A stretch of 63,684 nt of DNA, filler included, from Octopus bimaculoides (lineage: Eukaryota): NCBI RefSeq assembly GCF_001194135.2. It is 7 parts of 7 records of this genome, joined end to end, with 100 filler letters (N's around TTAATTAATTAA, not from the genome) between each part and the next. Parts side by side here need not be neighbours in the genome. Positions count along the whole stretch, not along the records: positions 25,875 to 37,076 come from NC_068985.1; 6 more parts are not named here. One strand, given 5' to 3'. Within the stretch, counting starts at the first letter, position 1; every line of letters begins with the position of its first letter. Below, one piece after another: positions 25,865 to 37,338 of the stretch. The translations under genes were made by a program, and so were the position numbers. Below the pieces are notes generated by a model, which was given only the letters and a program-made list of their open reading frames with translations, was not told the DNA's origin and made no database searches.

Positions 25865-26440
25865 NNNNNNNNNNGAGATCTCGTAGGTTATGGGCTCGTT
25901 TGAAGGAAGGGAGGGGTCGATTAGGGAAGATGTGGGAGGTGGAGGGGTCGAACTGGAGGCGCCGGAAAGCTCGGAGAATGGTGCGTTGGAGGGTAGGGTG
26001 GTGGGATGGTAGGTGAGGGGAAAAGGGAGGCGGGAAACGGCAGGGCGGGTTCGGGGGGAGAGAGCAGATGCATAGTCCATGGAATGTGCTCTGGCAAGGG
26101 AGGTGTGGATGGTGGTGAGGGGATGAGTCTCAAAGTCATGGCTGTCACTACAGAGCCTGCATAGATGGAGGAATTGGGAATAGGGGATGGAGAGCTTGGT
26201 GTGTTTAGGGTGGGAGGAGGAGAAGTTAAGATAAGAGTGTGAGTCTGTGTGTTTGTAGTGGATGGAGGTGCTAAGAGTGGAGTAATGGATGCTGACCGAA
26301 ATGTCAAGAAAGGGGACAGAGGTGTCAGAGATAGTGCAGGAGAAGTGGGGGGCAGGATGGAAGGATTGGACAAAAGAGAGGAACGAGTCAAGATGTTCGC
26401 GGGAGAGTGAGGTGGCACCGACACAGTCGTCAATATAACG
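25865..26440 (-). mobile_element. Penelope-like (Neptune-type) RT fragment
   Basis: A frame not shown in the ORF track reads RYIDDCVGATSLSREHLDSFLSFVQSFHPAPHFSCTISDTSVPFLDISV...YKHTDSHSYLNFSSSHPKHTKLSIPYSQFL...RLPFPLTYHP; truncated by a gap. Confidence 0.9.
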
Positions 26441-26926
26441 ATTAGAAACAGTAAAATCAGTTAAAAATTAATGCCAGCATTTAAAAATATCCACCCATTG
26501 TAATGACTACAGGCTAATGTTGTGAGAAATATCTTGGAATGTAAGCAAACAACAACCAGTTTGGAAAAAGAAGAGAGACAGACAGCAACCAGTGAGTGTG
26601 TTTAAAGACTTTATTAATTTCTCACATATAACAATACTGGTTTCAAAAGATGGTTTCAGGTCAAAATTCTTGAAATTCTCACAAAACAAATTTGGAATTG
26701 AATTAATGCATTTTTAAAAATTTCATTTCAGATACCTGCACAACACATACAAGCAATAAATAATTTTTCATTTTTTTTTTTAAAGATGTGGAAGGTAATT
26801 ATGAAACTATTTCAATCAAGCCAAACAGTAAGTATAATTAATGCCATTAGCAAATAGTATTTTATTTCATATTACTTTCAGAATTATATATATAATCAAT
26901 ATATATATATATTATATAATATATAT

Positions 26927-26995
<69 letters not shown>

Positions 26996-27379
26996 ACATA
27001 TCAACAGGAGAGGAAAAGTTTGGTATACTTTTAATTCTCTGTTACACATGTTTCATTACACGTTTGTCTGGCATGCTAATGCTTCTGCCAGCTTGTTGCT
27101 ACCCCATAACAAAAGAAACTGATGTAATACAATACTGGGAAGAGTTTGCACTCCCCCAACAACAAAAAGGAACACACAATGCTGCACACATCCCAGCAAC
27201 ACGGAGGTGTAGCAGGTCATGCAATAGAAAATTGTCTAAAACTACTAAATCATGAATAATAATAATAATAATAATCTTTATTTCTATAGGCACAAGGTCT
27301 GAAATTTTATGGGAGGGTTCTAGTGAGGCTAAATTTAATGAATTTTATCTCCTTTTCCGAGAACAACCTGATGTATTGG

Positions 27380-28110
27380 TGAATACTCCATTGGAAAGTA
27401 TAAAGATTAATGTGGTGGTTGAGAAAAGAATGATGATTCATGCTGGATATCAAAATGCTGAAGTCATGACTACTGCTCAATGCTCTGTGGGCACTGTAAA
27501 AGCTGTAAAATATGACATGAACAGCTGCAACAGAGACTATAATGCCGTGGCCAACAGGGACACAGCAGGCATTCTGTGCCTACATACTGGAATTCACCCA
27601 ATATCTAATGAAGTGGGCTTGAAGCTCAATTCAGATGGCTATGTGAAACTGCTAGAGACTGGTCAAACCCTAGCTAGTTAGAGTTGTTGCTGGAAAGCCA
27701 TATGTGAGACAACAGGATTCAGCTTCTTACCATACCTCCAGAAAGAATTAAAAGGATTTCTATGACTTCATCAACCCCAATTTCTGGTCTCCTAATTTCC
27801 CCAATTACTATATATTGGGCACAGTTGAAAAAGACACCAACTGCTCTGTCTGCAACACCAAGGCTGTTGGCCAAGATCAAGGAGGTGTTCACAGATCTTC
27901 CTAAGGACAAAGTGAGGAATGCCTGTGCCAGGTTTTGGAGCCATCTTAAGGCCATGGTGGAAGCTGAGGGCAGCTACTTTGAGTAAACTGTTATTTCCCA
28001 GCCATAATCTAGTTGATGCTTTTTTATATTTTAAAAAAATACTTGAATTTTTGGATGAAATATTGTGTTTTCTTTTCCTTTTATGCAAACTTTAAAATTT
28101 ATTCCAAACA
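27380..28110 (+). mobile_element. Tc1/mariner (maT/DD37D-like) transposase remnant
   Basis: FYDFINPNFWSPN..NYY.LGTVEKDTN followed by LAKIKEVFTDLPKDKVRNACARFWSHLKAMVEAEGSYFE*; frameshifted and internally deleted. Confidence 0.8.
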
Positions 28111-28734
28111 TTCTGTATGTATGTATGTAATGTATGTAATGTATGTATGTATGTATGTATGTATGTATGTATGTATGTATGTGTGTGTGTGTGTGTGTGG
28201 TATACATCATCATCATCATCATTTAACACCCACAAGGAACAGTGGGGGTAGTATAAGTAGTACAGAGGGGATAGAGTATGTTCCATGAGACCGTAAAATG
28301 TTTCGAGATAACAGAGATGTTGAGAAGAATTAGAGTGATGTTGAGAAGAATTAGAGTGGCTGTAGAGATAGCAAGTGATGGTAAATATGTAGCGAATGAT
28401 AGTGAGAGAGGGTATGTTAGATATATAGCAAGTGATGTGGAGTGGAATCGGAAGTGGCTGGGAAGGTTGATATGTGAGGGAGAAGGGGGACCTGCAGTAA
28501 GTGATGTGGGTGTAGGGAAGATAAGTTGTGGAGGAAGTCTGATACAGAACAGAATTATATGTGTGAGAGAGAGAGAGGGCATGGCAGTAAAGGACACGCC
28601 TGCATGTATGGATGGCCTCGATTTTACTACAATAGATAGACAGAGATTGACAGACATTTTTTCTTTATCTCTCTCTCACCCACTCTTTTAAGATTATTAT
28701 TTTTCATCTTCACTTTTTCCCTCTATCTCTATTT

Positions 28735-29090
28735 TCGGTCTTCCTTCTTACTTACTAAAACTTTAATTTCCCTAAGTTTATTTGAAGGCTTTTCAATTTC
28801 AGGTTTTACTTCCATTTCTGTAACTTTGTTTCACTTCCACAGATTCTGTTATGACAACTAAGTCATTAGTATTTAGGAAGGAATTCCCAAAGGTAGCTTG
28901 TCATAATTACTTTGTGGCTTGCAGGACTATAAGAAACAGTAGGGGATTGAGAACTGAACCCTTATAAATACCTACCTACACACTGAATTCAGCACTGAAC
29001 TCATTGCTGACTTTCACTTTGTTAACTGAAGCTCCTCTCTGAACTTTTTCCAACTTTTCTTAATCTGGTCACCATACATTTAGATCAACC
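28735..29090 (-). mobile_element. RTE LINE RT fragment
   Basis: SKVKVSNEFSAEF..VGIYKGSVLNPLLFLIVLQA...DLVVITES. Confidence 0.75.
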
Positions 29091-29799
29091 ATGTCCCTTG
29101 CTAATTATGTTTTCATTTCCTAGGTAACAGAAGCTACATGCATTTAAGTTGTAGCAAGTTGTCTGGAGTGTTCTGTTGCAAGTTTTGTTTAAAATGTTGA
29201 AGGAAAGTCTGAAGGCGAATGTATGAACAAATTCAACATACTTTATTTCAGGAGAGGTAACCCTCTTGTACAAGCAGTAGTAAGTGGTATTACAATTTTT
29301 AAGTAAACGTTGTATAAAATGTGTGGGAACAGAATGTACAATTGTGAGTGTTGGATGACAAGAAGAGTTTCAACAGACTTACTAAAGGATGACACTTCGT
29401 GGCTTAAATGATTCCAGGAGTGGCATGGCATAGTTGATTTTAGAGTCATGCCTGCATATCAAAATGTGATGTTAACACTATGCCAGTCAAGCTGCAACTA
29501 ACTAGCCCTTTCAAAAAGTGCGTGATACTGCTGCGCAGAAGCTGCCACATGTATTCTTCTGCAGCCAGCTCTAATGGTTTGAAGTGGACATAGCATGGCA
29601 TGTTACTCTGCCAAAACAAAATAAATCCCTCCTGGCAGCCTACAGAGTGAATCAATTTCAAGTGTGCTCATAATATGTATTGCTTCAGGACATCTGACAC
29701 ATATGAAGCTTACTTATTCTATTAGTCAGCCTGTGATTCCACTACACCTCTTGAATGCCCATAGCTTACTTTATGTATTGTATATAATTTACTCCTACT

Positions 29800-30090
29800 C
29801 CTGTTTCTTTCTTACCTACTAAAACCTTACTCTTTGCTCTACCTTTAGGTTTTTTCTTTTCTCTGTTTAGCTTCCTTGTACAGAATTTCCTCTGTAACTT
29901 CACTTTAGATTCAGGTGTGAGAACTAGATTAGCATATATGAGTTCCCATGGACAGCCAGTCTTAAACTCTTCTGTAGTGATCTATAGAACTATGATGAAT
30001 AAGAGAAGACTGAGGACTGAGCCTTAATGGACACTTACTTTCATGCTAAATCCATTACCTGTTGCCTAGCTACACTTTAAGCCATTTGAT
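29800..30090 (-). mobile_element. RTE LINE RT fragment (second copy of the same RT segment)
   Basis: FSMKVSVH*GSVLSLLLFIIVL*ITTEEFKTGCPWELIYAN resembles VGVHQGSVLSPLLF...CPWELLYADD. Confidence 0.8.
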
Positions 30091-31537
30091 AATACTCCCT
30101 ACTACCATCTTCCTCCCAGGTTTTCCAAGCCCGTCGTTTAGCTGTTAGCAGCATTTCATTCCACTTTATTTTCTGAGTTCAAATTCTGCTGAGGTCAACT
30201 TTGACTTTCATCCTTTTGAGGTCATTAAAATAAGAAGCAATTGAGTACTGGGGTTGATGTAATCAACTTATACCCTCCCCCGAACTTGCTGGCCTTGTGC
30301 CTAAATTTGAAACCAATATTATATGTCATTTTCCATCATTCACTCATTCTTCGCAGTAACTGTGTCTACCACAAAAGTTGTAGTTTGCAACTATTATCTA
30401 TAAATAAATATATAGTAAATCTTCATAGTCTGTTAATATGTCTGATATCATGGGTGTTTGCTATGTCTTTTTATTAGTCATTAGTAGGATGTTGATATGG
30501 GTGAAGGAGTTGGGAGGGAGACAAAAGAAAGATTTCCAATATAGGTGGTGGGGGCATAGGCTCTGGAACACTGTGTGCAAGATCACCTACTGAAATATTT
30601 TGGGGTCGGGTGGGGTGCGAGTGGAAAGGGTGCTAGGAAAATGCTTTGAACAATTTGGGTTGGACCTGGATTTGCATCTACTAAGCAAATTTCATTCCTG
30701 CACTTATGGTGGAGTGTGTGAATTGCAAGTAGGCAAGCAGCAAATATTCATGAGAGAGAGACAAAATATCCAAATTGTCATGAGAAATACAAAATATTGA
30801 TATTAAGAGAACAGGAAGCAATCCACCATGTTCATATGAGAAAAAGAGGTTTTAATAAGAATAAAACTATATCAGATTAAAGAAGGGACATGTTAGATTA
30901 AGGATGATGCATAAAAGGCTGTTTGACACAGTAGAAGGCGAAGTTTATGGCAGAAATTAAAGCTGGGAAAACAGAGATTGGAGCTTATTTTGACACCATT
31001 TTTCATGTCTGGTAGTAGCCAAGCATTGACAGTAATATGAAAACAGGGTAGTATGTAGTGTAAACATGACAAGAGGAGGAGACAGGAAGCTGAGATACTA
31101 TTAAAGGAAGTAGTGAACATGCATTGTGAGCAAGTGAACTGCAAAGTTCTATGAGAGAGATGAAATATTAGTTTCAAATTTTGGCTCAAGGCCAACAATT
31201 TCAGAAGGGATAAATCAATTACATTGACCTCAATGCTCAACTGGTACTTATATTATCGACCCTGAAAGGCAAAGTCAACCTCGGCAACATTTGAACTTCG
31301 AACATAAAGACAGATGAAATGCTGCTAAGCATTTTTCCCAGTGAGCTAACAATTCTGCCAGCTTTATGAGAGAGGAAATATTGATATTAAGAGGACAGTA
31401 AGTGAACTACCACACTCACATAAGAGAAAGAAATATTAAAAAGAAATATTTATATATGTCTATTTGTGTATGTATGTATGTATGTACAAGACCTAAGCTT
31501 CATAAGTTGATTTGGTAGGTGGTGAGAAGTCTGTCAT

Positions 31538-31594
<57 letters not shown>

Positions 31595-31655
31595 NNNNNN
31601 NNNNNNNNNNNNNNNNNNNNNNNNNNNNNNNNNNNNNNNNNNNNNNNNNNNNNNN

Positions 31656-31695
<40 letters not shown>

Positions 31696-31817
31696 TTGTT
31701 TACATGTTCATGTATATCCTTATGAATGTTACATTTACACTTCTCTGAAGATTGCAAATTAAAAGAAGCGATCTTACCATTTCTCCAATGAACAAGATAT
31801 TCAGGCAAGAGTAAATC

Positions 31818-34800
31818 TGTAGAGATACTATAAGTTATATTCACTTAGTGAGTTTACATGTGCAAGGAATGAATTATGATGTTGTCATTGTTGTCATTGT
31901 TAGATGCAGTAAGAGCTGGTAGCAGCAATATTGGCAATGATGAATGTCATTGTGTTGTAATGCAGGGAAAGTGAGCAAATAGCTTCCTGGTGCAAATGCA
32001 AACTAGACTCTCTAAGCAGAGAAAAACTGATCTATTTAAGGAAATTGCTAGGCTCCACAGATGTAAAAGATTTTTTTAACCAAGAGAACACGTGATCCAT
32101 TGAGCACATTTGTAATTGTTTAGGGGACAAATTGCACCAAAAGCTAACTTAGCAGAACAAATGGTTGAAACATGATATTTATAGCTAAGTGTTCTCTGCA
32201 ACATCCAAACAACAACTATAAATAAATAAAAGGAAGAGAGAATAGTTTGTCATTTATGCTTTTGTCAATCTATTCTGCTACAGAACTCCCCTACCAGAAC
32301 ATTTCTGGGACACAAATGTGTGATAAAAGGAAAGAATTCCTAGCAAAAATGGGAAGACAAAAGTGTTGAACATGCTAGTACAGTTATTAGACTGCATGCA
32401 GAATTATGCAGAGCAAGAAAAATACAGCATCTTACAATAAAATAAAATGTGTGAAACTTCAAACAAGGTATTGAAAAGAATGTAGGAAATTGGCATATAA
32501 ATAGCAAGGCATAGAAATGTATGCTTTGAACACAAAATAAACATCACCTGAAAATGCATATGTATGATTACAAAAAACTGGCGGTCATAGAAATGTTTTT
32601 AAATATATAAAGTTTTGCATGGTTTTGAAGTGCTTTGTTGAATGGACTGGCTTGCTTGGTTGAGAAGTGAGATTCCTAAGATCAGGAAACTTATTTAGGA
32701 GAGCTTGATACGAATCGCCTGCGGCAGCAATAAGATTCGATGGGCTAATACTTGGAGTCAGCAAGTCTTAACCAGTAACAGATAAAGCGGTGGAGCTATC
32801 CTACAAGCATCATTTTCAGACATCTACCATGAAGGAAAAATAATGAAAGAAATCTGCACCCAAAATTGGAAATAGAATGTCAGCAATGACAAAAATCCAC
32901 TTGAAGTCCCATCTAAGCACCAAATCTAAGACAGAGATATCTGGCCATACATTTTTATAGGTGAATGATTCACCACTTGTAGCATGACATCTGTAAGGAA
33001 CTTTACCGGCCAAATGCTGCATGATGCGCCAGTGTCTACCATAAAGAATTTTCAAGAATTAAAGTCCGCCACAAAAAATTGCATGGTTTTGAACTTGGGA
33101 AGAGGAACCTGCTGCCATGCTCAAAGCTTCCTCCACAAGTTTTCCAGATGTGGGATAAAACAAAGAGAAACACATTTCCATACATTCTTATCAAAAGGGG
33201 CATGATACCAACAATATGTCAAGGCAGAAGGAGAAAACAATCAGAGTCTTGGAGATGGGGAATGACTGGAGTACTAGCAACATGAAGAATGTTGCAAAGA
33301 GCACAACTTTTTAACTTCTTTTGTAAGTTTTAATATCATATGCAGCATCACTGCTTGGTCTGAATGACTGATGGCTGAAGGAGAAGAAGAAAACAGAGGC
33401 AAACTCGAAGCAATGACTTTATGTTCAACAGGAGAGCTGTCTAAAAATTCCATTATTTTATCTGCACTTGTTACCAGCTGGTCCCTGGAACTGATCTCTA
33501 ACATAGGTGCTAAAATCGATTGAACGTTCCTTGGGAGACAAGAGAAGAAGAGTTGTTTGACCACAGAACTGTCCTCTGGTGAAACGTCTGTTAATTCACG
33601 AATTCTATGCAAAAATTCAGTAGACCATCTGTTGTCTAAATGCTCATCATTTAAAAAGATTTTGAAATGACACTCAGCAGATAAAGTCATTCTTCTAAGA
33701 ATTTTCTGTTTGATTGACAAATATGTAACATCACCAGTGGGTATCTGTAATTAAGTTCTGGATGTGTACAGAGAGTGCTGATGGAATCGCCCTGAGCAAA
33801 ATATGTAGTTGCTGCTGTATCAACTGGATGTTCGATGCATGGAAATGCTATTTCACCTGAGTTAACCATAATTTAGCATTGCCATTAAAAACTGGTATGG
33901 TTGATGGATTCATACTGCTGGAAATTTGTAGCAAAAACGATAGTTAACATAAGAAAGAAAGCAAATTCGGGCACCAAACTGGTAGAGATGGCACACTGTG
34001 TTAAAATAAATGGTTGGTATTCAGAAATTCTTGGGCAAAGAGATACCAACAAGCCATTAGTTGTACAAGCTGCTTAAACATAAGAAAAGCTGGGTATAGT
34101 CAAAATTCCCTTTGTTTGAGACAAAGGTGTGAAGAAAATATTTCTACTCCAAAGTATAAGTTAAACACCGTATCTCCTGGAAAAATTCAAAAGCAGAAAA
34201 TTCTTCAGATGAAAGCAGAAAGTTCTTGAGATGGAGTCACCAATTTTTAGTGAGAAGACCAACTGATAGTCTGGAAACCTGCTAAAATAAACATTAAAAA
34301 TCAAAAGGAGAAAATAAACAGCTTTGCAAGTTTAACTCAGTGTTTATTGAACAAGACAGGTGCAAAATTTAAGAAGTGACTTGTTAGAATATACATATCT
34401 GTGAGGGGACAATAAACAAGAATAGCAAAAATCTACAATACCAATAGGACTGGTAATACATACATTACAAGTGTTCTGTGAAGAGAAAATAAGGTTGCTG
34501 CATAATTCGATGTGAATGTGAAACGATATTAAACATCGTATAAGGTAAATGAAGGATTCTGTAGGAACGCTATAAGTCATTCACTTAGTGAATGACTTAT
34601 AGCACAAGGAATGAATTATGATGTCATTATTGGAGTTAGATGCAGCAAGAGCAGGTAGCAGTGATATCAGCAGTGATGAATTTCATTTTGTCATAATGTG
34701 GAGAATGTGAGCAAATAGCTTCCTGGTGCAAATGCAAGCTAGACTCTCTAAGCAGAGAAAAACTGATCTATTTAAGGAAATTGCTAGGTTACACAGATGT

Positions 34801-35069
34801 GAAAGGATTTTTTGTCAAGAGAACATGTGATCCATTGAGCGCATCTGATTGGTTTACTGGGTATTTTGGCATAATTGTTTAGGAGACAAATTGCACTTAA
34901 AAACTAACTAATCAGAACAAAAGGTTAAAACATGATCTTTATAGTTAAGTGTTCTCTGCTACGTCCAAACAACGACTATAAATAAAAAGAAGAGAGAATA
35001 GGAAGAGAGAAAAGGAAGAGAAAAGAGAGAAAAGTTTGTCATTTATGCTTTTCAATCCATTCTACTACA
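31818..35069 (-). mobile_element. Internally deleted Gypsy/Ty3 LTR retrotransposon
   Basis: Direct repeats 31818-32282 and 34560-35069, both TGTAG...CTACA. Gag-like 33720-33274 (KQLFFSCLPRNVQSIL), protease-like 33055-32816 (WIFVIADILFPILGADFF), RT start near 32760-32620 (YQALLNKFPDL). PPT-like GGTAGGGGAG before 32282; flanks AATC/CATC. Confidence 0.85.
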
Positions 35070-35352
35070 CATCAATGAGAGGATGAAGAACTTACACTGT
35101 ACATGCAGTTTGGTTGGAATATTTTTTGTTTCTGAATACATGTGTATATATATGTAATTTACTGAGTGAAATATACAGAGTAAAAGGCAGACAGTTTTCA
35201 GTCAAACTGTCCAACCCATGCCAACATGGAAAGTGGTCATTAAATTATGATGACACCATGTATTTTATTATATTTTTACCTTCTTTCTGTGCAATATTTA
35301 AAACATCCTTTGCAAACAATAAATATGCCCATTTCAATTCAATTTCTTGAAG

Positions 35353-35412
35353 CTGAGGAAAAGCAGTACACTGAAATTAGTGAGCACGAATATGAATGTA
35401 CAAAACACCGAG
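35353..35412 (+). CDS. Candidate 60-nt phase 1-1 micro-exon of an unidentified gene ((A)EEKQYTEISEHEYECTKHR)
   Basis: Acceptor TTTCTTGAAG|, consensus donor GAG|GTAAGT, open symmetric frame. The paralogous copy near 35820-35877 has lost the AG and has a stop. Confidence 0.5.
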
Positions 35413-36128
35413 GTAAGTATAATCAATGTACATAGTACATAGCATGATCTTAGAAATGATTTTAAAGAGAAACAGAGAGCTAACCATAATGAAATGTATC
35501 ATTCTCTTTTTGTGTTAGAGTCTATCTCATTAGCATTTATTATGGTAGTATCAGCACAATATTAACATAATTTAAATGCTATTTATAGCCATATTTAAAA
35601 TTTTTTAAAAAATTTCTTAAATATATGGATGGTGCTCTTATGTTAATGATTCACAGAAACCTGAGCAATCCATTCTAAAATTACATTCATTAGAGCAAGA
35701 GTTAGCAAATATGAAATATACAATTTTTTTTTGTTGCTATTTTCTGTGCAACTTCAAAATATTTAAGACACCCTCACTAAATAATAAATATACCCGTTTT
35801 TTTATTCAACTTCTCTATGCTGTAAAAGAGCAACATGCTAAGTTCATGAGCCTAAATATTTATATATAAAAGAATCAGTAAGAATAATCAATAATGTTAG
35901 TACACAGCATGATTTCAGAAATGATCTTAAAGAAAAACAGAAAGCTAACAATCATGAAATGTCTACTCCCTCTTTGTCTGTTAATGTATGTGTACATACA
36001 AGTATATGTGTATGAGTGTGTTAGAGTCTATCTCATTAATGTTTATTATGGTAGTCTCAGCACAGTACTAACATAATTCAATTGTTATTTATACCCATGT
36101 TTATAATTCTTGTTTTAATTTCTGAAAG

Positions 36129-36170
36129 ATGTGGATGTTGATTATGTTAATGCTTCAAGGAAACCTGATG
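36129..36170 (+). CDS. Candidate 42-nt phase 1-1 micro-exon ((D)VDVDYVNASRKPD)
   Basis: Acceptor TTAATTTCTGAAAG|, donor ATG|GTAAGT; splices in frame to 35353-35412. The paralogous copy near 35622-35664 has lost both splice sites. Confidence 0.5.
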
Positions 36171-36257
36171 GTAAGTATATAAGCAACTCATTAATAAAAT
36201 TACATTTATTAGAGCAAAAGTTAGTAAATATCTTGGTTCATTCTTTCTTTGTGTAGC

Positions 36258-36307
<50 letters not shown>

Positions 36308-36473
36308 ACAAAATTAAGAGGAATGACCACTAAAGTGGACACCTAATATGCTAAACATAGACGTCAAATCGCCATTACCAAGAAGAGTATGTTCTCAAGA
36401 AAAATCTCAGCAAAACGCCAAAATGTAAAAATGAGCAAGACAAATGAAAATATACGAAATAAAAAACGATTAC

Positions 36474-36538
36474 CTACATACCATGGTTTCACTTGTTAAT
36501 ATTTACATATGTAAATATCTGCAAGATCATCAGTGTAG
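36474..36538 (-). ncRNA. Type I hammerhead ribozyme motif (opposite-strand copy)
   Basis: Reverse complement reads CTACA-CTGATGA-T-CTTG...CAAG-T-GAAAC-CATG-GTA-TGTAG; stem I CTACA/TGTAG is compensatory relative to the plus-strand copy. Confidence 0.75.
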
Positions 36539-36737
36539 TTTTTAAATAAAGATGTTCTCTAACCGGTAAATTAGCTGCTGAGATTTATTAACTGCAGAGT
36601 TATTTCTGGCCTCAGCATGCCAAAGTAAAGACATTTGAAAAATACACCCAAATATAATTTGTAGAACTTTATACATGCTCTATTTCAGTTGAGTGTTCTG
36701 TATCTAGTCCTGGAAATTGTGTTTTGTAAGCAACAGA

Positions 36738-36802
36738 CTACGCTGATGATCTTGCAGATATTTACATACGTAAATATTAACAAGTGAAACCATGGTACGT
36801 AG
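36738..36802 (+). ncRNA. Type I hammerhead ribozyme motif
   Basis: CTACG-CTGATGA-T-CTTG...CAAG-T-GAAAC-CATG-GTA-CGTAG. Intact core, stem I CTACG/CGTAG, stem II extended by ATATTTAC/GTAAATAT, palindromic stem III ACCATGGT, GUA cleavage triplet. U-U mismatch at the base of stem II. Confidence 0.75.
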
Positions 36803-37338
36803 GTAATCGTTTTTTTATTTCATATATTATCATTTGTCTTGCTCATTTTTACATTTTGGCGTTTTGCTGAGATTTTTCTTGAGAACACACCCTTCGTGGT
36901 AATGGCGATTTGACGTCTATGTTTAGCATATTAGGTATCCACTTTAGTAGTCATTCCTCTTAATTTTGTATGTAATATAATTTTTAATCTTCAGATTTTT
37001 TAAATATGCTAAGCCATTGATTTTAATTGATTGTTATCAATTTCTACCCTTATTATTTAATTTATATATATATATANNNNNNNNNNNNNNNNNNNNNNNN
37101 NNNNNNNNNNNNNNNNNNNNTTAATTAATTAANNNNNNNNNNNNNNNNNNNNNNNNNNNNNNNNNNNNNNNNNNNNATTTTGTGTAAATACCGCAAACGT
37201 TTTGCGATGTATTTTTTTCATCGTTGTCCCCACTTTTGTTTTTTTTTCTGCTTTGTTTTCGCCCCCCTCGAAAAGAAAAACTCTACATTTGTATTTTGTC
37301 CCCTCTATGTTGAGCCCTGTGTGGCTAATAAAGAAACA

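What the first reader, a model, noticed from the sequence alone, without database searches (positions are those of the whole stretch)
35280..36232. Reciprocal exon decay in a tandem duplication reveals a hidden Tyr-motif gene
Seen: each duplicate unit holds an exon A and an exon B homologue. Copy 1 keeps A (35353-35412, AG/GTAAGT) but has lost B (acceptor AG>AT, 14-nt deletion of the donor). Copy 2 has lost A (acceptor AG>TG, stop, length change) but keeps B (36129-36170). A1+B2 splice in frame to EEKQYTEISEHEYECTKHRDVDVDYVNASRKPD. Complementary retention is unlikely under neutral decay. Known: YxN is a Grb2-SH2-type motif and phase-1 micro-exons are typical of receptor tails. Inference: cytoplasmic tail of an unannotated receptor or adaptor, antisense to and possibly nested in the CYP locus.
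Basis: partly seen in the sequence, partly recalled or inferred. Interest (0 to 1): 0.7.

Follow-up and report, generated by a model that had tools for sequence, protein, structure and literature searches.

The report
Duplicated micro-exons of an unidentified gene
A roughly 1-kb stretch was duplicated in tandem inside what looks like an animal gene, and one copy of each of its two tiny exons has since decayed; this is an ordinary outcome, and the exons probably, but not provably, encode a tyrosine-rich protein segment.

Summary
Window 35268-36232 is a two-copy tandem duplication, about 80% identical in non-exon sequence. Copy 1 keeps exon-like A1 (35353-35412) and carries a broken B. Copy 2 carries a broken A and keeps B2 (36129-36170). 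A1 and B2 join in frame to the stated 33-residue peptide.

In a neutral simulation, exactly one A and one B stay intact in 14-21% of runs. Open frames of this size are common here (0.32-0.45). A second frame is also open in every exon.

B0 (26786-26827, + strand) lies 9.3 kb upstream. It has B2's length and phase, the same GTAAGTATA donor, and a related peptide (DVEGNYETISIKPN against DVDVDYVNASRKPD). It matches B2 at 44 of 61 bases; no shuffle exceeded 36, and identity falls to chance just outside.

So these are probably real, symmetric, phase-1 micro-exons of a + strand gene. The acidic, tyrosine-rich reading is favoured. The idea of a receptor or adaptor tail is inference only. No homologue, transcript or organism could be found with these tools. 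Interest is low to moderate.

The parts
26786..26827 (+). Exon B0. Flanks are TTTTTTAAAG| and |GTAAGTATAA. Peptide in the phase-1 frame: (D)VEGNYETISIKPN.
   Evidence: Searches give coordinates, flanks and frame; 44/61 ungapped identity to B2 including splice flanks; the best unrelated window scores 32/61; 200 shuffles reach at most 36; the next 60 nt on each side score 20/60 and 17/60; the flanks do not align to the duplication unit.
35268..35724 (+). Copy 1 of the tandem duplication unit. It contains intact A1 and decayed psiB1.
   Evidence: repeat families D1, D3, D7, D8, D9; 82% mean column identity. One search gives identity by region.
35353..35412 (+). Exon A1. 60 nt, flanked by AG| and |GTAAGTATA. 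Phase-1 frame peptide EEKQYTEISEHEYECTKHR. GC 0.40, against 0.24-0.27 in the surrounding non-exon sequence.
35623..35663 (+). psiB1, the decayed copy of exon B. The acceptor AG has become AT, there is a 2-nt insertion, and a 14-nt deletion removes the donor.
   Evidence: tblastn remnant YVNDSQKPE at 35639-35665.
35725..36232 (+). Copy 2 of the tandem duplication unit. It contains decayed psiA2 and intact B2, plus a 41-nt TG/TA-rich insertion at about 35976-36016.
35820..35877 (+). psiA2, the decayed copy of exon A. The acceptor AG has become TG, two 1-nt deletions shorten it to 58 nt, and stops occur in all three frames. GC has fallen to 0.28, the background level. The donor GTAAGA is still present.
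36129..36170 (+). Exon B2. 42 nt, flanked by AG| and |GTAAGTATA. Phase-1 frame peptide (D)VDVDYVNASRKPD(G).

Best explanation
The piece is intron-rich, transposon-littered DNA of an AT-rich animal genome. A + strand protein-coding gene probably runs through it.

At least three very short exons of that gene are visible: B0 (26786-26827), A1 (35353-35412) and B2 (36129-36170).
- Each is a multiple of 3 nt long (42, 60, 42).
- Each is open in the same phase, with introns of phase 1 on both sides.
- Each ends at an identical strong donor, GTAAGTATA.
- Because they are symmetric, any of them can be duplicated, skipped or lost without shifting the frame.

Inferred history:
1. An old exon duplication gave B0 and B. 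Their introns have since diverged beyond recognition.
2. Much later, a segment of about 460 bp carrying A and B was duplicated in tandem. Non-exon identity is now about 80%, a Jukes-Cantor distance of roughly 0.23 by my own calculation.
3. The redundant middle pair, B1 and A2, lost their splice sites and frames. This restored an A...B arrangement using A1 and B2.

In the favoured frame the exons encode an acidic, tyrosine-rich, probably disordered segment: DVEGNYETISIKPN / EEKQYTEISEHEYECTKHR / DVDVDYVNASRKPD. Each tyrosine follows acidic residues. The motifs are of the YxxI and YxN types, which SH2 domains bind after phosphorylation. The most likely function is a modular phosphotyrosine docking region of a signalling receptor tail or an adaptor.

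Status of each step:
- Shown: the duplication, the decay of one copy of each exon, and the exon-limited B0/B2 homology.
- Inferred: that the exons are spliced, which frame is used, and the function.
For: Duplication and lesions.

B0/B2 homology:
- 44/61 identity. The best unrelated window in the piece scores 32/61. In 200 shuffles the maximum identity per shuffle averaged 31.6 (sd 1.1, highest 36).
- Identity drops to chance (20/60 and 17/60) immediately outside. MAFFT finds no flank similarity.
- An island of conservation bounded by an acceptor and a donor is what purifying selection on an exon gives.

Splice signals and geometry:
- GTAAGTAT(A) occurs three times in 11.2 kb on both strands together, against about 0.5 expected per strand. 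All three are the donors of the three candidates.
- In one search's list of + strand candidates (GTRAGT donor, AG acceptor with pyrimidine-rich upstream tract, open frame containing Tyr), the three candidates with lengths divisible by 3 are exactly these. Two overlapping 25/28-nt rows at 29252-29279 are the rest of the list.

Direction of decay:
- A1 keeps GC 0.40 while psiA2 has fallen to 0.28, against a non-exon level of 0.24-0.27.
- The excess A1/psiA2 divergence sits at A1's G/C sites: 14/22 against 23/80 in non-exon sequence, p=0.005.
- B2 keeps the B0 state at 3 of 4 informative substitutions.

Frame:
- The phase-1 frame gives conservative replacements between B0 and B2 (E/D, N/D, N/D) with D, V, Y, S, K and P conserved.
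- The rival frame gives Met- and Trp-rich peptides, with 4 Met in the 14 residues of B2.

[quoted passage not shown] Tyrosines lie in exons 9 and 12-15, and exon 14 is 19 amino acids (PMC2132561).
Against: - No transcript, spliced read or homologue was available.
- Both open frames were searched against 5.8 billion proteins and no candidate shared three 5-residue words.
- Pfam found nothing, and degenerate DNA patterns found nothing in metagenome contigs. These negatives are weak. The collections appear not to hold this genome: window ORFs are not on record, and the best relatives of the transposon fragment are only 50-68% identical and sit in metagenome assemblies.
- Frame 0 is open in all three exons with the same BLOSUM62 score, 28 against 28.
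- By my own count from the two sequences, B0/B2 differences show no third-position excess (4/5/6). Coding is therefore not demonstrated by the substitution pattern.
- Open frames of this length are common here.
- A crude splice-site score gives equally good decoys on the minus strand.
- No transmembrane segment, start, stop or other exon of the gene lies in the piece.
Confidence: 0.6

Rival explanations
1. Relics of a dead gene or of a captured gene fragment. B0, A and B were once real exons, which explains the B0/B2 island. The gene is no longer expressed or spliced, and A1 and B2 are simply the copies that have not yet been hit.
For: - Neutral simulation: an intact A survives with probability 0.20-0.31 per copy and an intact B with 0.35-0.47. 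Exactly one of each survives in 14-21% of runs.
- No homologue or annotated product was found.
- The neighbourhood is full of transposon fragments.
Against: - All three donors still carry the full 9-nt GTAAGTATA.
- A1 keeps an exon-like GC of 0.40 while its duplicate has relaxed to background. B2 rather than psiB1 keeps the ancestral B0 states.
- If the gene had died before the recent duplication, both copies should have decayed alike.
Confidence: 0.2
2. Real spliced exons, but not the Tyr-motif peptide. Either they are translated in frame 0 (MWKVIMKLFQSSQT / LRKSSTLKLVSTNMNVQNTE / MWMLIMLMLQGNLM), or they are non-coding exons of an untranslated region or a long non-coding RNA.
For: - Frame 0 is open in B0, A1 and B2, and the B0/B2 BLOSUM62 score is identical to that of the Tyr frame, 28 against 28.
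- B0/B2 differences are spread evenly over codon positions (my count from the sequences).
- No protein homologue was found for either frame.
Against: - Frame 0 peptides are oddly rich in Met and Trp, and their replacements are non-conservative (K/M, K/L, Q/L, T/M).
- All exon lengths are multiples of 3, and B0 and B2 have kept exactly 42 nt. That is expected for coding cassette exons and not required for non-coding ones.
Confidence: 0.12
3. Chance. These are exon-like strings in AT-rich repetitive DNA with no history as exons.
For: - Short open frames are common here: 0.45 for 13 codons and 0.32 for 19.
- Decoy 'exons' with similar crude splice scores exist on the minus strand.
Against: - The B0/B2 match of 44/61 lies far outside the shuffles, whose maximum is 36.
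- The match ends exactly at the splice signals.
- The only three GTAAGTATA in the piece are these donors.
Confidence: 0.03

Closest known systems
Tandem exon duplication followed by loss of the redundant copies (pseudo-exons left in introns), as described in surveys of animal genes. This comparison is from my own knowledge and was not looked up here.
   Same: - Short symmetric exons are duplicated together with their intron.
- The duplicates keep length and phase.
- Some copies lose their splice sites and persist as recognisable dead exons inside the intron.
   Different: - Here a two-exon unit was duplicated and the inner pair, B1 and A2, was lost, so the surviving exons come from different copies.
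- There is no evidence that the duplicates were ever used as mutually exclusive alternative exons.
Duplication-degeneration-complementation (reciprocal loss between gene duplicates). From my own knowledge.
   Same: Complementary degeneration of parts in two duplicates, so that both copies are needed to give one full set.
   Different: - That model concerns whole genes and their subfunctions, preserved by selection.
- Here the parts are exons within one transcription unit.
- The outcome is also fairly likely without selection (14-21%).
PECAM-1 (CD31) cytoplasmic domain
   Same: - It is a signalling tail built from a string of very short exons. [quoted passage not shown]
- Tyrosines lie in exons 9 and 12-15, and exon 14 is a 19-amino-acid tyrosine-bearing cassette exon (PMC2132561).
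- A1 is likewise a 19-20-residue Tyr-bearing exon.
   Different: - No sequence homology was shown.
- No immunoglobulin or transmembrane exons are visible here.
- The PECAM-1 tyrosines lie in ITIM-type motifs (from my own knowledge), and the motifs here do not fit that consensus.
ITAM/ITIM-bearing invertebrate receptors (for example Hydractinia Alr proteins; Drosophila Draper)
   Same: - Tyrosine motifs of the YxxI/L type in fast-evolving cytoplasmic tails of invertebrate receptors.
- Alr tails are too diverse to align across the family (PMC9546547). That fits the absence of detectable homologues here.
   Different: - Using the consensus sequences quoted in that paper, no ITIM is present.
- YETI-x10-YTEI lies outside the ITAM spacing of x6-9, and it exists only if B0 is spliced directly to A1, which is unknown.

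Membership tests
Intragenic tandem duplication of an exon-containing unit | Two adjacent, head-to-tail copies that can be aligned over their whole length, introns included | tested here: met
   copies at 35268-35724 and 35725-36232, 82% mean column identity; non-exon identity 80%.
Intragenic tandem duplication of an exon-containing unit | The unit lies inside a transcribed, spliced gene | not testable with these tools
   No transcript data and no source genome. Support is indirect, from the exon-limited B0/B2 homology and the shared donors.
Paralogous (duplicated) coding exons | Same length, same phase, conserved splice sites, and similarity confined to the exon | tested here: met
   B0 and B2 are both 42 nt, open in the same frames, and end at AAAG|...|GTAAGTATA. 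Identity is 44/61, with flanks at chance.
Paralogous (duplicated) coding exons | Substitution pattern typical of coding sequence (an excess of third-position or synonymous changes) | tested here: inconclusive
   The B0/B2 differences (14's 28/42 exon matches; 15 in my uncomputed position-by-position tally) fall 4/5/6 on codon positions 1/2/3 of the Tyr frame (that tally). Both open frames score 28 with BLOSUM62.
ITIM ([I/L/V/S]xYxx[I/V/L], as quoted in PMC9546547) | A consensus match at any tyrosine | tested here: not met
   GNYETI (position -2 is G), KQYTEI (-2 is K), HEYECT (-2 is H, +3 is T), VDYVNA (+3 is A). Read directly from the peptide; the consensus is.
ITAM (Yxx[I/L]x(6-9)Yxx[L/I], as quoted in PMC9546547) | Two YxxI/L motifs 6-9 residues apart | tested here: not met
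   YETI and YTEI would be 10 residues apart, and only if B0 joins A1 directly, which is unknown because 8.5 kb lies between them. Within A1+B2 there is no second YxxI/L.
pYxN (Grb2-SH2-type) docking motif | Tyr with Asn at position +2 | tested here: met
   YVNA in B2. This is a motif match only. Whether the tyrosine is phosphorylated or bound by an SH2 domain cannot be tested here. The motif rule itself is from my own knowledge.
Receptor cytoplasmic tail | An upstream transmembrane segment and extracellular domain in the same transcript | not testable with these tools
   No such exon lies in the piece. Only 25875-37076 is available.

The most novel reading that the evidence does not exclude
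The three micro-exons belong to a gene that no annotation reports. It would be a lineage-specific signalling receptor or adaptor whose phosphotyrosine docking tail is assembled from interchangeable phase-1 cassette exons. The tail would evolve by duplication of exon units followed by pseudo-exonisation of the surplus copies, which would explain why no homologue can be found by sequence.
Probability: 0.25. Interest if true: 0.4.

Novelty: new member of a known kind. Interest (0 to 1): 0.28.

Why it matters
If the exons are real, gene finders and homology searches easily miss them. They are 14-20 codons long, lie kilobases apart, and have no detectable relatives. They would mark part of a signalling protein with modular tyrosine motifs in an invertebrate.

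The locus also gives a clean small example of how symmetric micro-exons are duplicated and pruned. The paralogue B0 shows that this happened more than once in the same gene.

The practical lesson for the scan is that complementary survival of duplicated exons is not strong evidence of function. An older paralogous exon whose similarity stops at the splice sites is strong evidence.

Tried and rejected
- **Protein homology.** The 49-residue B0+A1+B2 peptide and the 48-residue frame-0 peptide were searched against 5.8 billion proteins. No candidate was found. Pfam found nothing for either.
- **Exhaustive HMMER library.** I did not submit a window-exact ORF, because a 19-residue match could not reach significance against 1.84 billion proteins.
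- **Exact look-up of window ORFs** (62 aa across A1; 148 aa at 33274-33720): not on record.
- **Identifying the organism through the reverse-transcriptase-like fragment.** This gave 453 hits with PF26215/PF00078. The best are 50-68% identical and sit in ENA metagenome assemblies, without names or accession numbers. The organism remains unidentified, and 'cephalopod' is untested.
- **Degenerate DNA patterns** for A1 and for B2 plus its donor in metagenome contigs: no match.
- **Search for further A- or B-like exons in the piece** by tblastn and blastn: only psiB1 and B0 were found.
- **A third, partial copy of the unit after 36232:** not significant.
- **Crude splice-site scoring.** The three exons rank 2-4 on the + strand, but the minus strand gives equally good decoys, so I discarded this as evidence.
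- **Rfam and tRNA scans:** only microsatellite artefacts below the gathering scores.
- **Pfam on eight transposon-like ORFs:** no hits at E of 0.01 or better.

Full report
**1. What is in the sequence**

Window 35268-36232 consists of two head-to-tail copies of a unit of about 460-510 bp (35268-35724 and 35725-36232).
- The repeat finder returns five collinear families spaced 457-519 nt apart.
- A MAFFT alignment gives 82% mean column identity.
- Split by region, non-exon identity is 260/323, or 80%. That is a Jukes-Cantor distance of roughly 0.23 by my own calculation.
- Copy 2 carries an extra 41-nt TG/TA-rich stretch at about 35976-36016.
- A third partial copy after 36232 is not supported.

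**2.

- A1 (35353-35412, 60 nt) is flanked by TTTCTTGAAG| and |GTAAGTATAA.
- B2 (36129-36170, 42 nt) is flanked by TTTCTGAAAG| and |GTAAGTATAT.
- Joined, they read EEKQYTEISEHEYECTKHRDVDVDYVNASRKPD.
- The B homologue in copy 1 (35623-35663) has AAAT instead of AAAG at the acceptor. It also has a 2-nt insertion and a 14-nt deletion that removes the donor.
- The A homologue in copy 2 (35820-35877) has TATG instead of GAAG. It is 58 nt rather than 60 and has stops in all three frames.

**3.

- I simulated neutral decay of intact A and B exons at the observed per-lineage divergence (0.10-0.13) and indel rate.
  - An A copy stays intact in 20-31% of runs, and a B copy in 35-47%.
  - Exactly one A and one B survive in 14-21% of runs.
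  - The specific A1+/B2+ pattern occurs in 4-5%.
- Open frames of 13 and 19 codons occur at 45% and 32% of positions in this piece.
- A second frame, frame 0, is open through all the exons.
- A crude splice-site score ranks the exons 2-4 on the + strand but yields equally good decoys on the minus strand.

None of these features, alone, shows a gene.

**4. What does show a gene: a third exon**

At 26786-26827, 9.3 kb upstream on the same strand, lies a 42-nt segment. It is flanked by TTTTTTAAAG| and |GTAAGTATAA and open in the same phase. It encodes DVEGNYETISIKPN, against B2's DVDVDYVNASRKPD.
- Over 61 nt (10 nt upstream, the exon, 9 nt downstream) B0 and B2 share 44 positions.
- The best unrelated window on either strand has 32. 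In 200 composition-preserving shuffles the maximum identity per shuffle averaged 31.6, and none exceeded 36.
- The next 60 nt on either side match at 20/60 and 17/60, which is chance for this composition. MAFFT finds no flank similarity to the duplication unit.
- An island of similarity that begins at an acceptor and ends at a donor, in otherwise unalignable DNA, is what long-term selection on an exon produces.
- GTAAGTAT(A) occurs three times in the whole 11.2-kb piece on both strands. These are precisely the donors of B0, A1 and B2, against about 0.5 expected per strand.
- In the + strand scan for candidates with a GTRAGT donor, an AG acceptor behind a pyrimidine-rich tract, and an open frame containing Tyr, the three hits whose length is divisible by 3 are these exons. 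The two other hits are overlapping 25/28-nt decoys at 29252-29279.

**5. Direction of decay in the young duplication**

The A region is more diverged (62% identity) than non-exon sequence (80%; Fisher p=0.003). At first sight this contradicts purifying selection on A1.
- The excess sits entirely at A1's G/C positions: 14/22 mismatched against 23/80 in non-exon sequence, p=0.005. A/T positions show 8/36 against 40/243, not significant.
- A1 has GC 0.40. psiA2 has 0.28, the local non-exon level being 0.24-0.27.
- The simplest reading is that psiA2 relaxed from exon-like to background composition under AT-biased mutation, while A1 was held.
- Using B0 as an outgroup, B2 keeps the B0 state at 3 of 4 informative substitutions and psiB1 at 1.
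- Both results are small samples, but they point the same way.

**6. Frame and product**

All three exons are multiples of 3, so they cannot fix the frame among themselves. Frame 1 is closed.
- Frame 0 gives MWKVIMKLFQSSQT / LRKSSTLKLVSTNMNVQNTE / MWMLIMLMLQGNLM.
- The B0/B2 BLOSUM62 scores are equal, 28 against 28. By my own count, the differences fall 4/5/6 on codon positions.
- I favour the Tyr frame. Its conserved residues (D, V, Y, S, K, P) and conservative swaps (E/D, N/D, N/D) look like a constrained motif. Frame 0 would need four Met in the 14 residues of B2. This is a judgement, not a demonstration.

**7. Function (inference)**

In the favoured frame there are four tyrosines, each preceded by acidic residues: NYETI, QYTEI, EYECT and DYVNA.
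- Against the consensus sequences quoted in PMC9546547, none is an ITIM.
- YETI-x10-YTEI misses the ITAM spacing of 6-9. It exists only if B0 is spliced directly to A1.
- YVNA fits the pYxN rule for Grb2-type SH2 domains. YETI and YTEI resemble the pYEEI preference of Src-family SH2 domains. Both rules are from my own knowledge.
- A modular phosphotyrosine docking segment is therefore the most likely role.
- The nearest documented layout is the PECAM-1 cytoplasmic domain. It is encoded by exons 9-16, with tyrosines in exons 9 and 12-15 and a 19-amino-acid exon 14 (PMC2132561).
- Whether the protein is a receptor or a cytosolic adaptor cannot be told. No transmembrane or extracellular exon lies in the piece.

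**8. External evidence: none obtainable**

- Both peptides found no candidate among 5.8 billion proteins. Pfam found nothing, and degenerate DNA patterns found nothing in metagenome contigs.
- These negatives weigh little. Window ORFs are not on record.
- The reverse-transcriptase-like fragment at the left edge finds only relatives 50-68% identical, in metagenome assemblies. The source genome therefore seems absent from the collections.

**9. Verdict**

| Question | Assessment |
|---|---|
| Observation | Confirmed |
| Interpretation | Partly supported |
| Real phase-1 micro-exons of a + strand gene | About 0.7 |
| Tyr-motif frame | About 0.6 overall |
| Receptor or adaptor docking tail | About 0.35 |

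The evolutionary pattern is tandem duplication of symmetric exons followed by loss of the surplus copies. It is a known and unsurprising process. I file the finding as a new member of a known kind, with low to moderate interest.

Noticed in passing
window 36305-36972: A near-perfect long hairpin lies 135 nt downstream of the B2 donor. Its arms are about 235 nt (36306-36539 and 36737-36971, 96% complementary) around a loop of about 197 nt. It sits directly after an (AT)n microsatellite at 36258-36308. It folds at -397 kcal/mol, against -131 +/- 6 for shuffles. It looks like a foldback or MITE-like insertion or an inverted duplication in the intron, and it could give double-stranded RNA if transcribed.
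   Followed up: partly
window 25875-26436 (minus strand): A G+C-rich block (55% GC against about 35% elsewhere, strong GC skew) is cut by the piece's edge. It encodes 188 aa of a reverse transcriptase C-terminal part (YIDD...FLD...HYKHTDSHSYLNFSSSHPKH). The 453 database relatives carry PF26215 (HTH_animal) and PF00078; the best are 50-68% identical. It is a retroelement fragment, antisense to the proposed gene.
   Followed up: partly
window 27376-27986 (+), 32816-33720 (-), 28223-28691 (both strands): Further ORFs of 74-148 aa look, from memory, like transposase and gag/protease remnants. None hits Pfam at E of 0.01 or better. They are probably decayed mobile-element fragments filling the 8.5-kb interval between B0 and A1.
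   Followed up: partly
window 29252-29279 (+): A 28-nt segment has a textbook acceptor (ctttatttcag|) and donor (|GTAAGTGG). Its length is not a multiple of 3, and including it between B0 and A1 would put a stop into A1. It is probably a decoy. If used, it would act as a frame-breaking ('poison') exon.
   Followed up: no
window 31540-31692: An assembly gap of 61 N (31595-31655) sits inside a (GT)n microsatellite. Other long microsatellites are (AC)34 at 26930-26998 and (TGTA)21 at 28114-28198. They are the source of the weak mir-297/mir-1277 Rfam matches, which are artefacts.
   Followed up: yes
window 35353-35412 vs 35820-35877: The A exon pair is significantly more diverged (62%) than the surrounding intron (80%). 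Compositional relaxation of psiA2 explains the excess at G/C sites. Positive selection on A1 after the duplication is not excluded, because there is no outgroup for A.
   Followed up: partly
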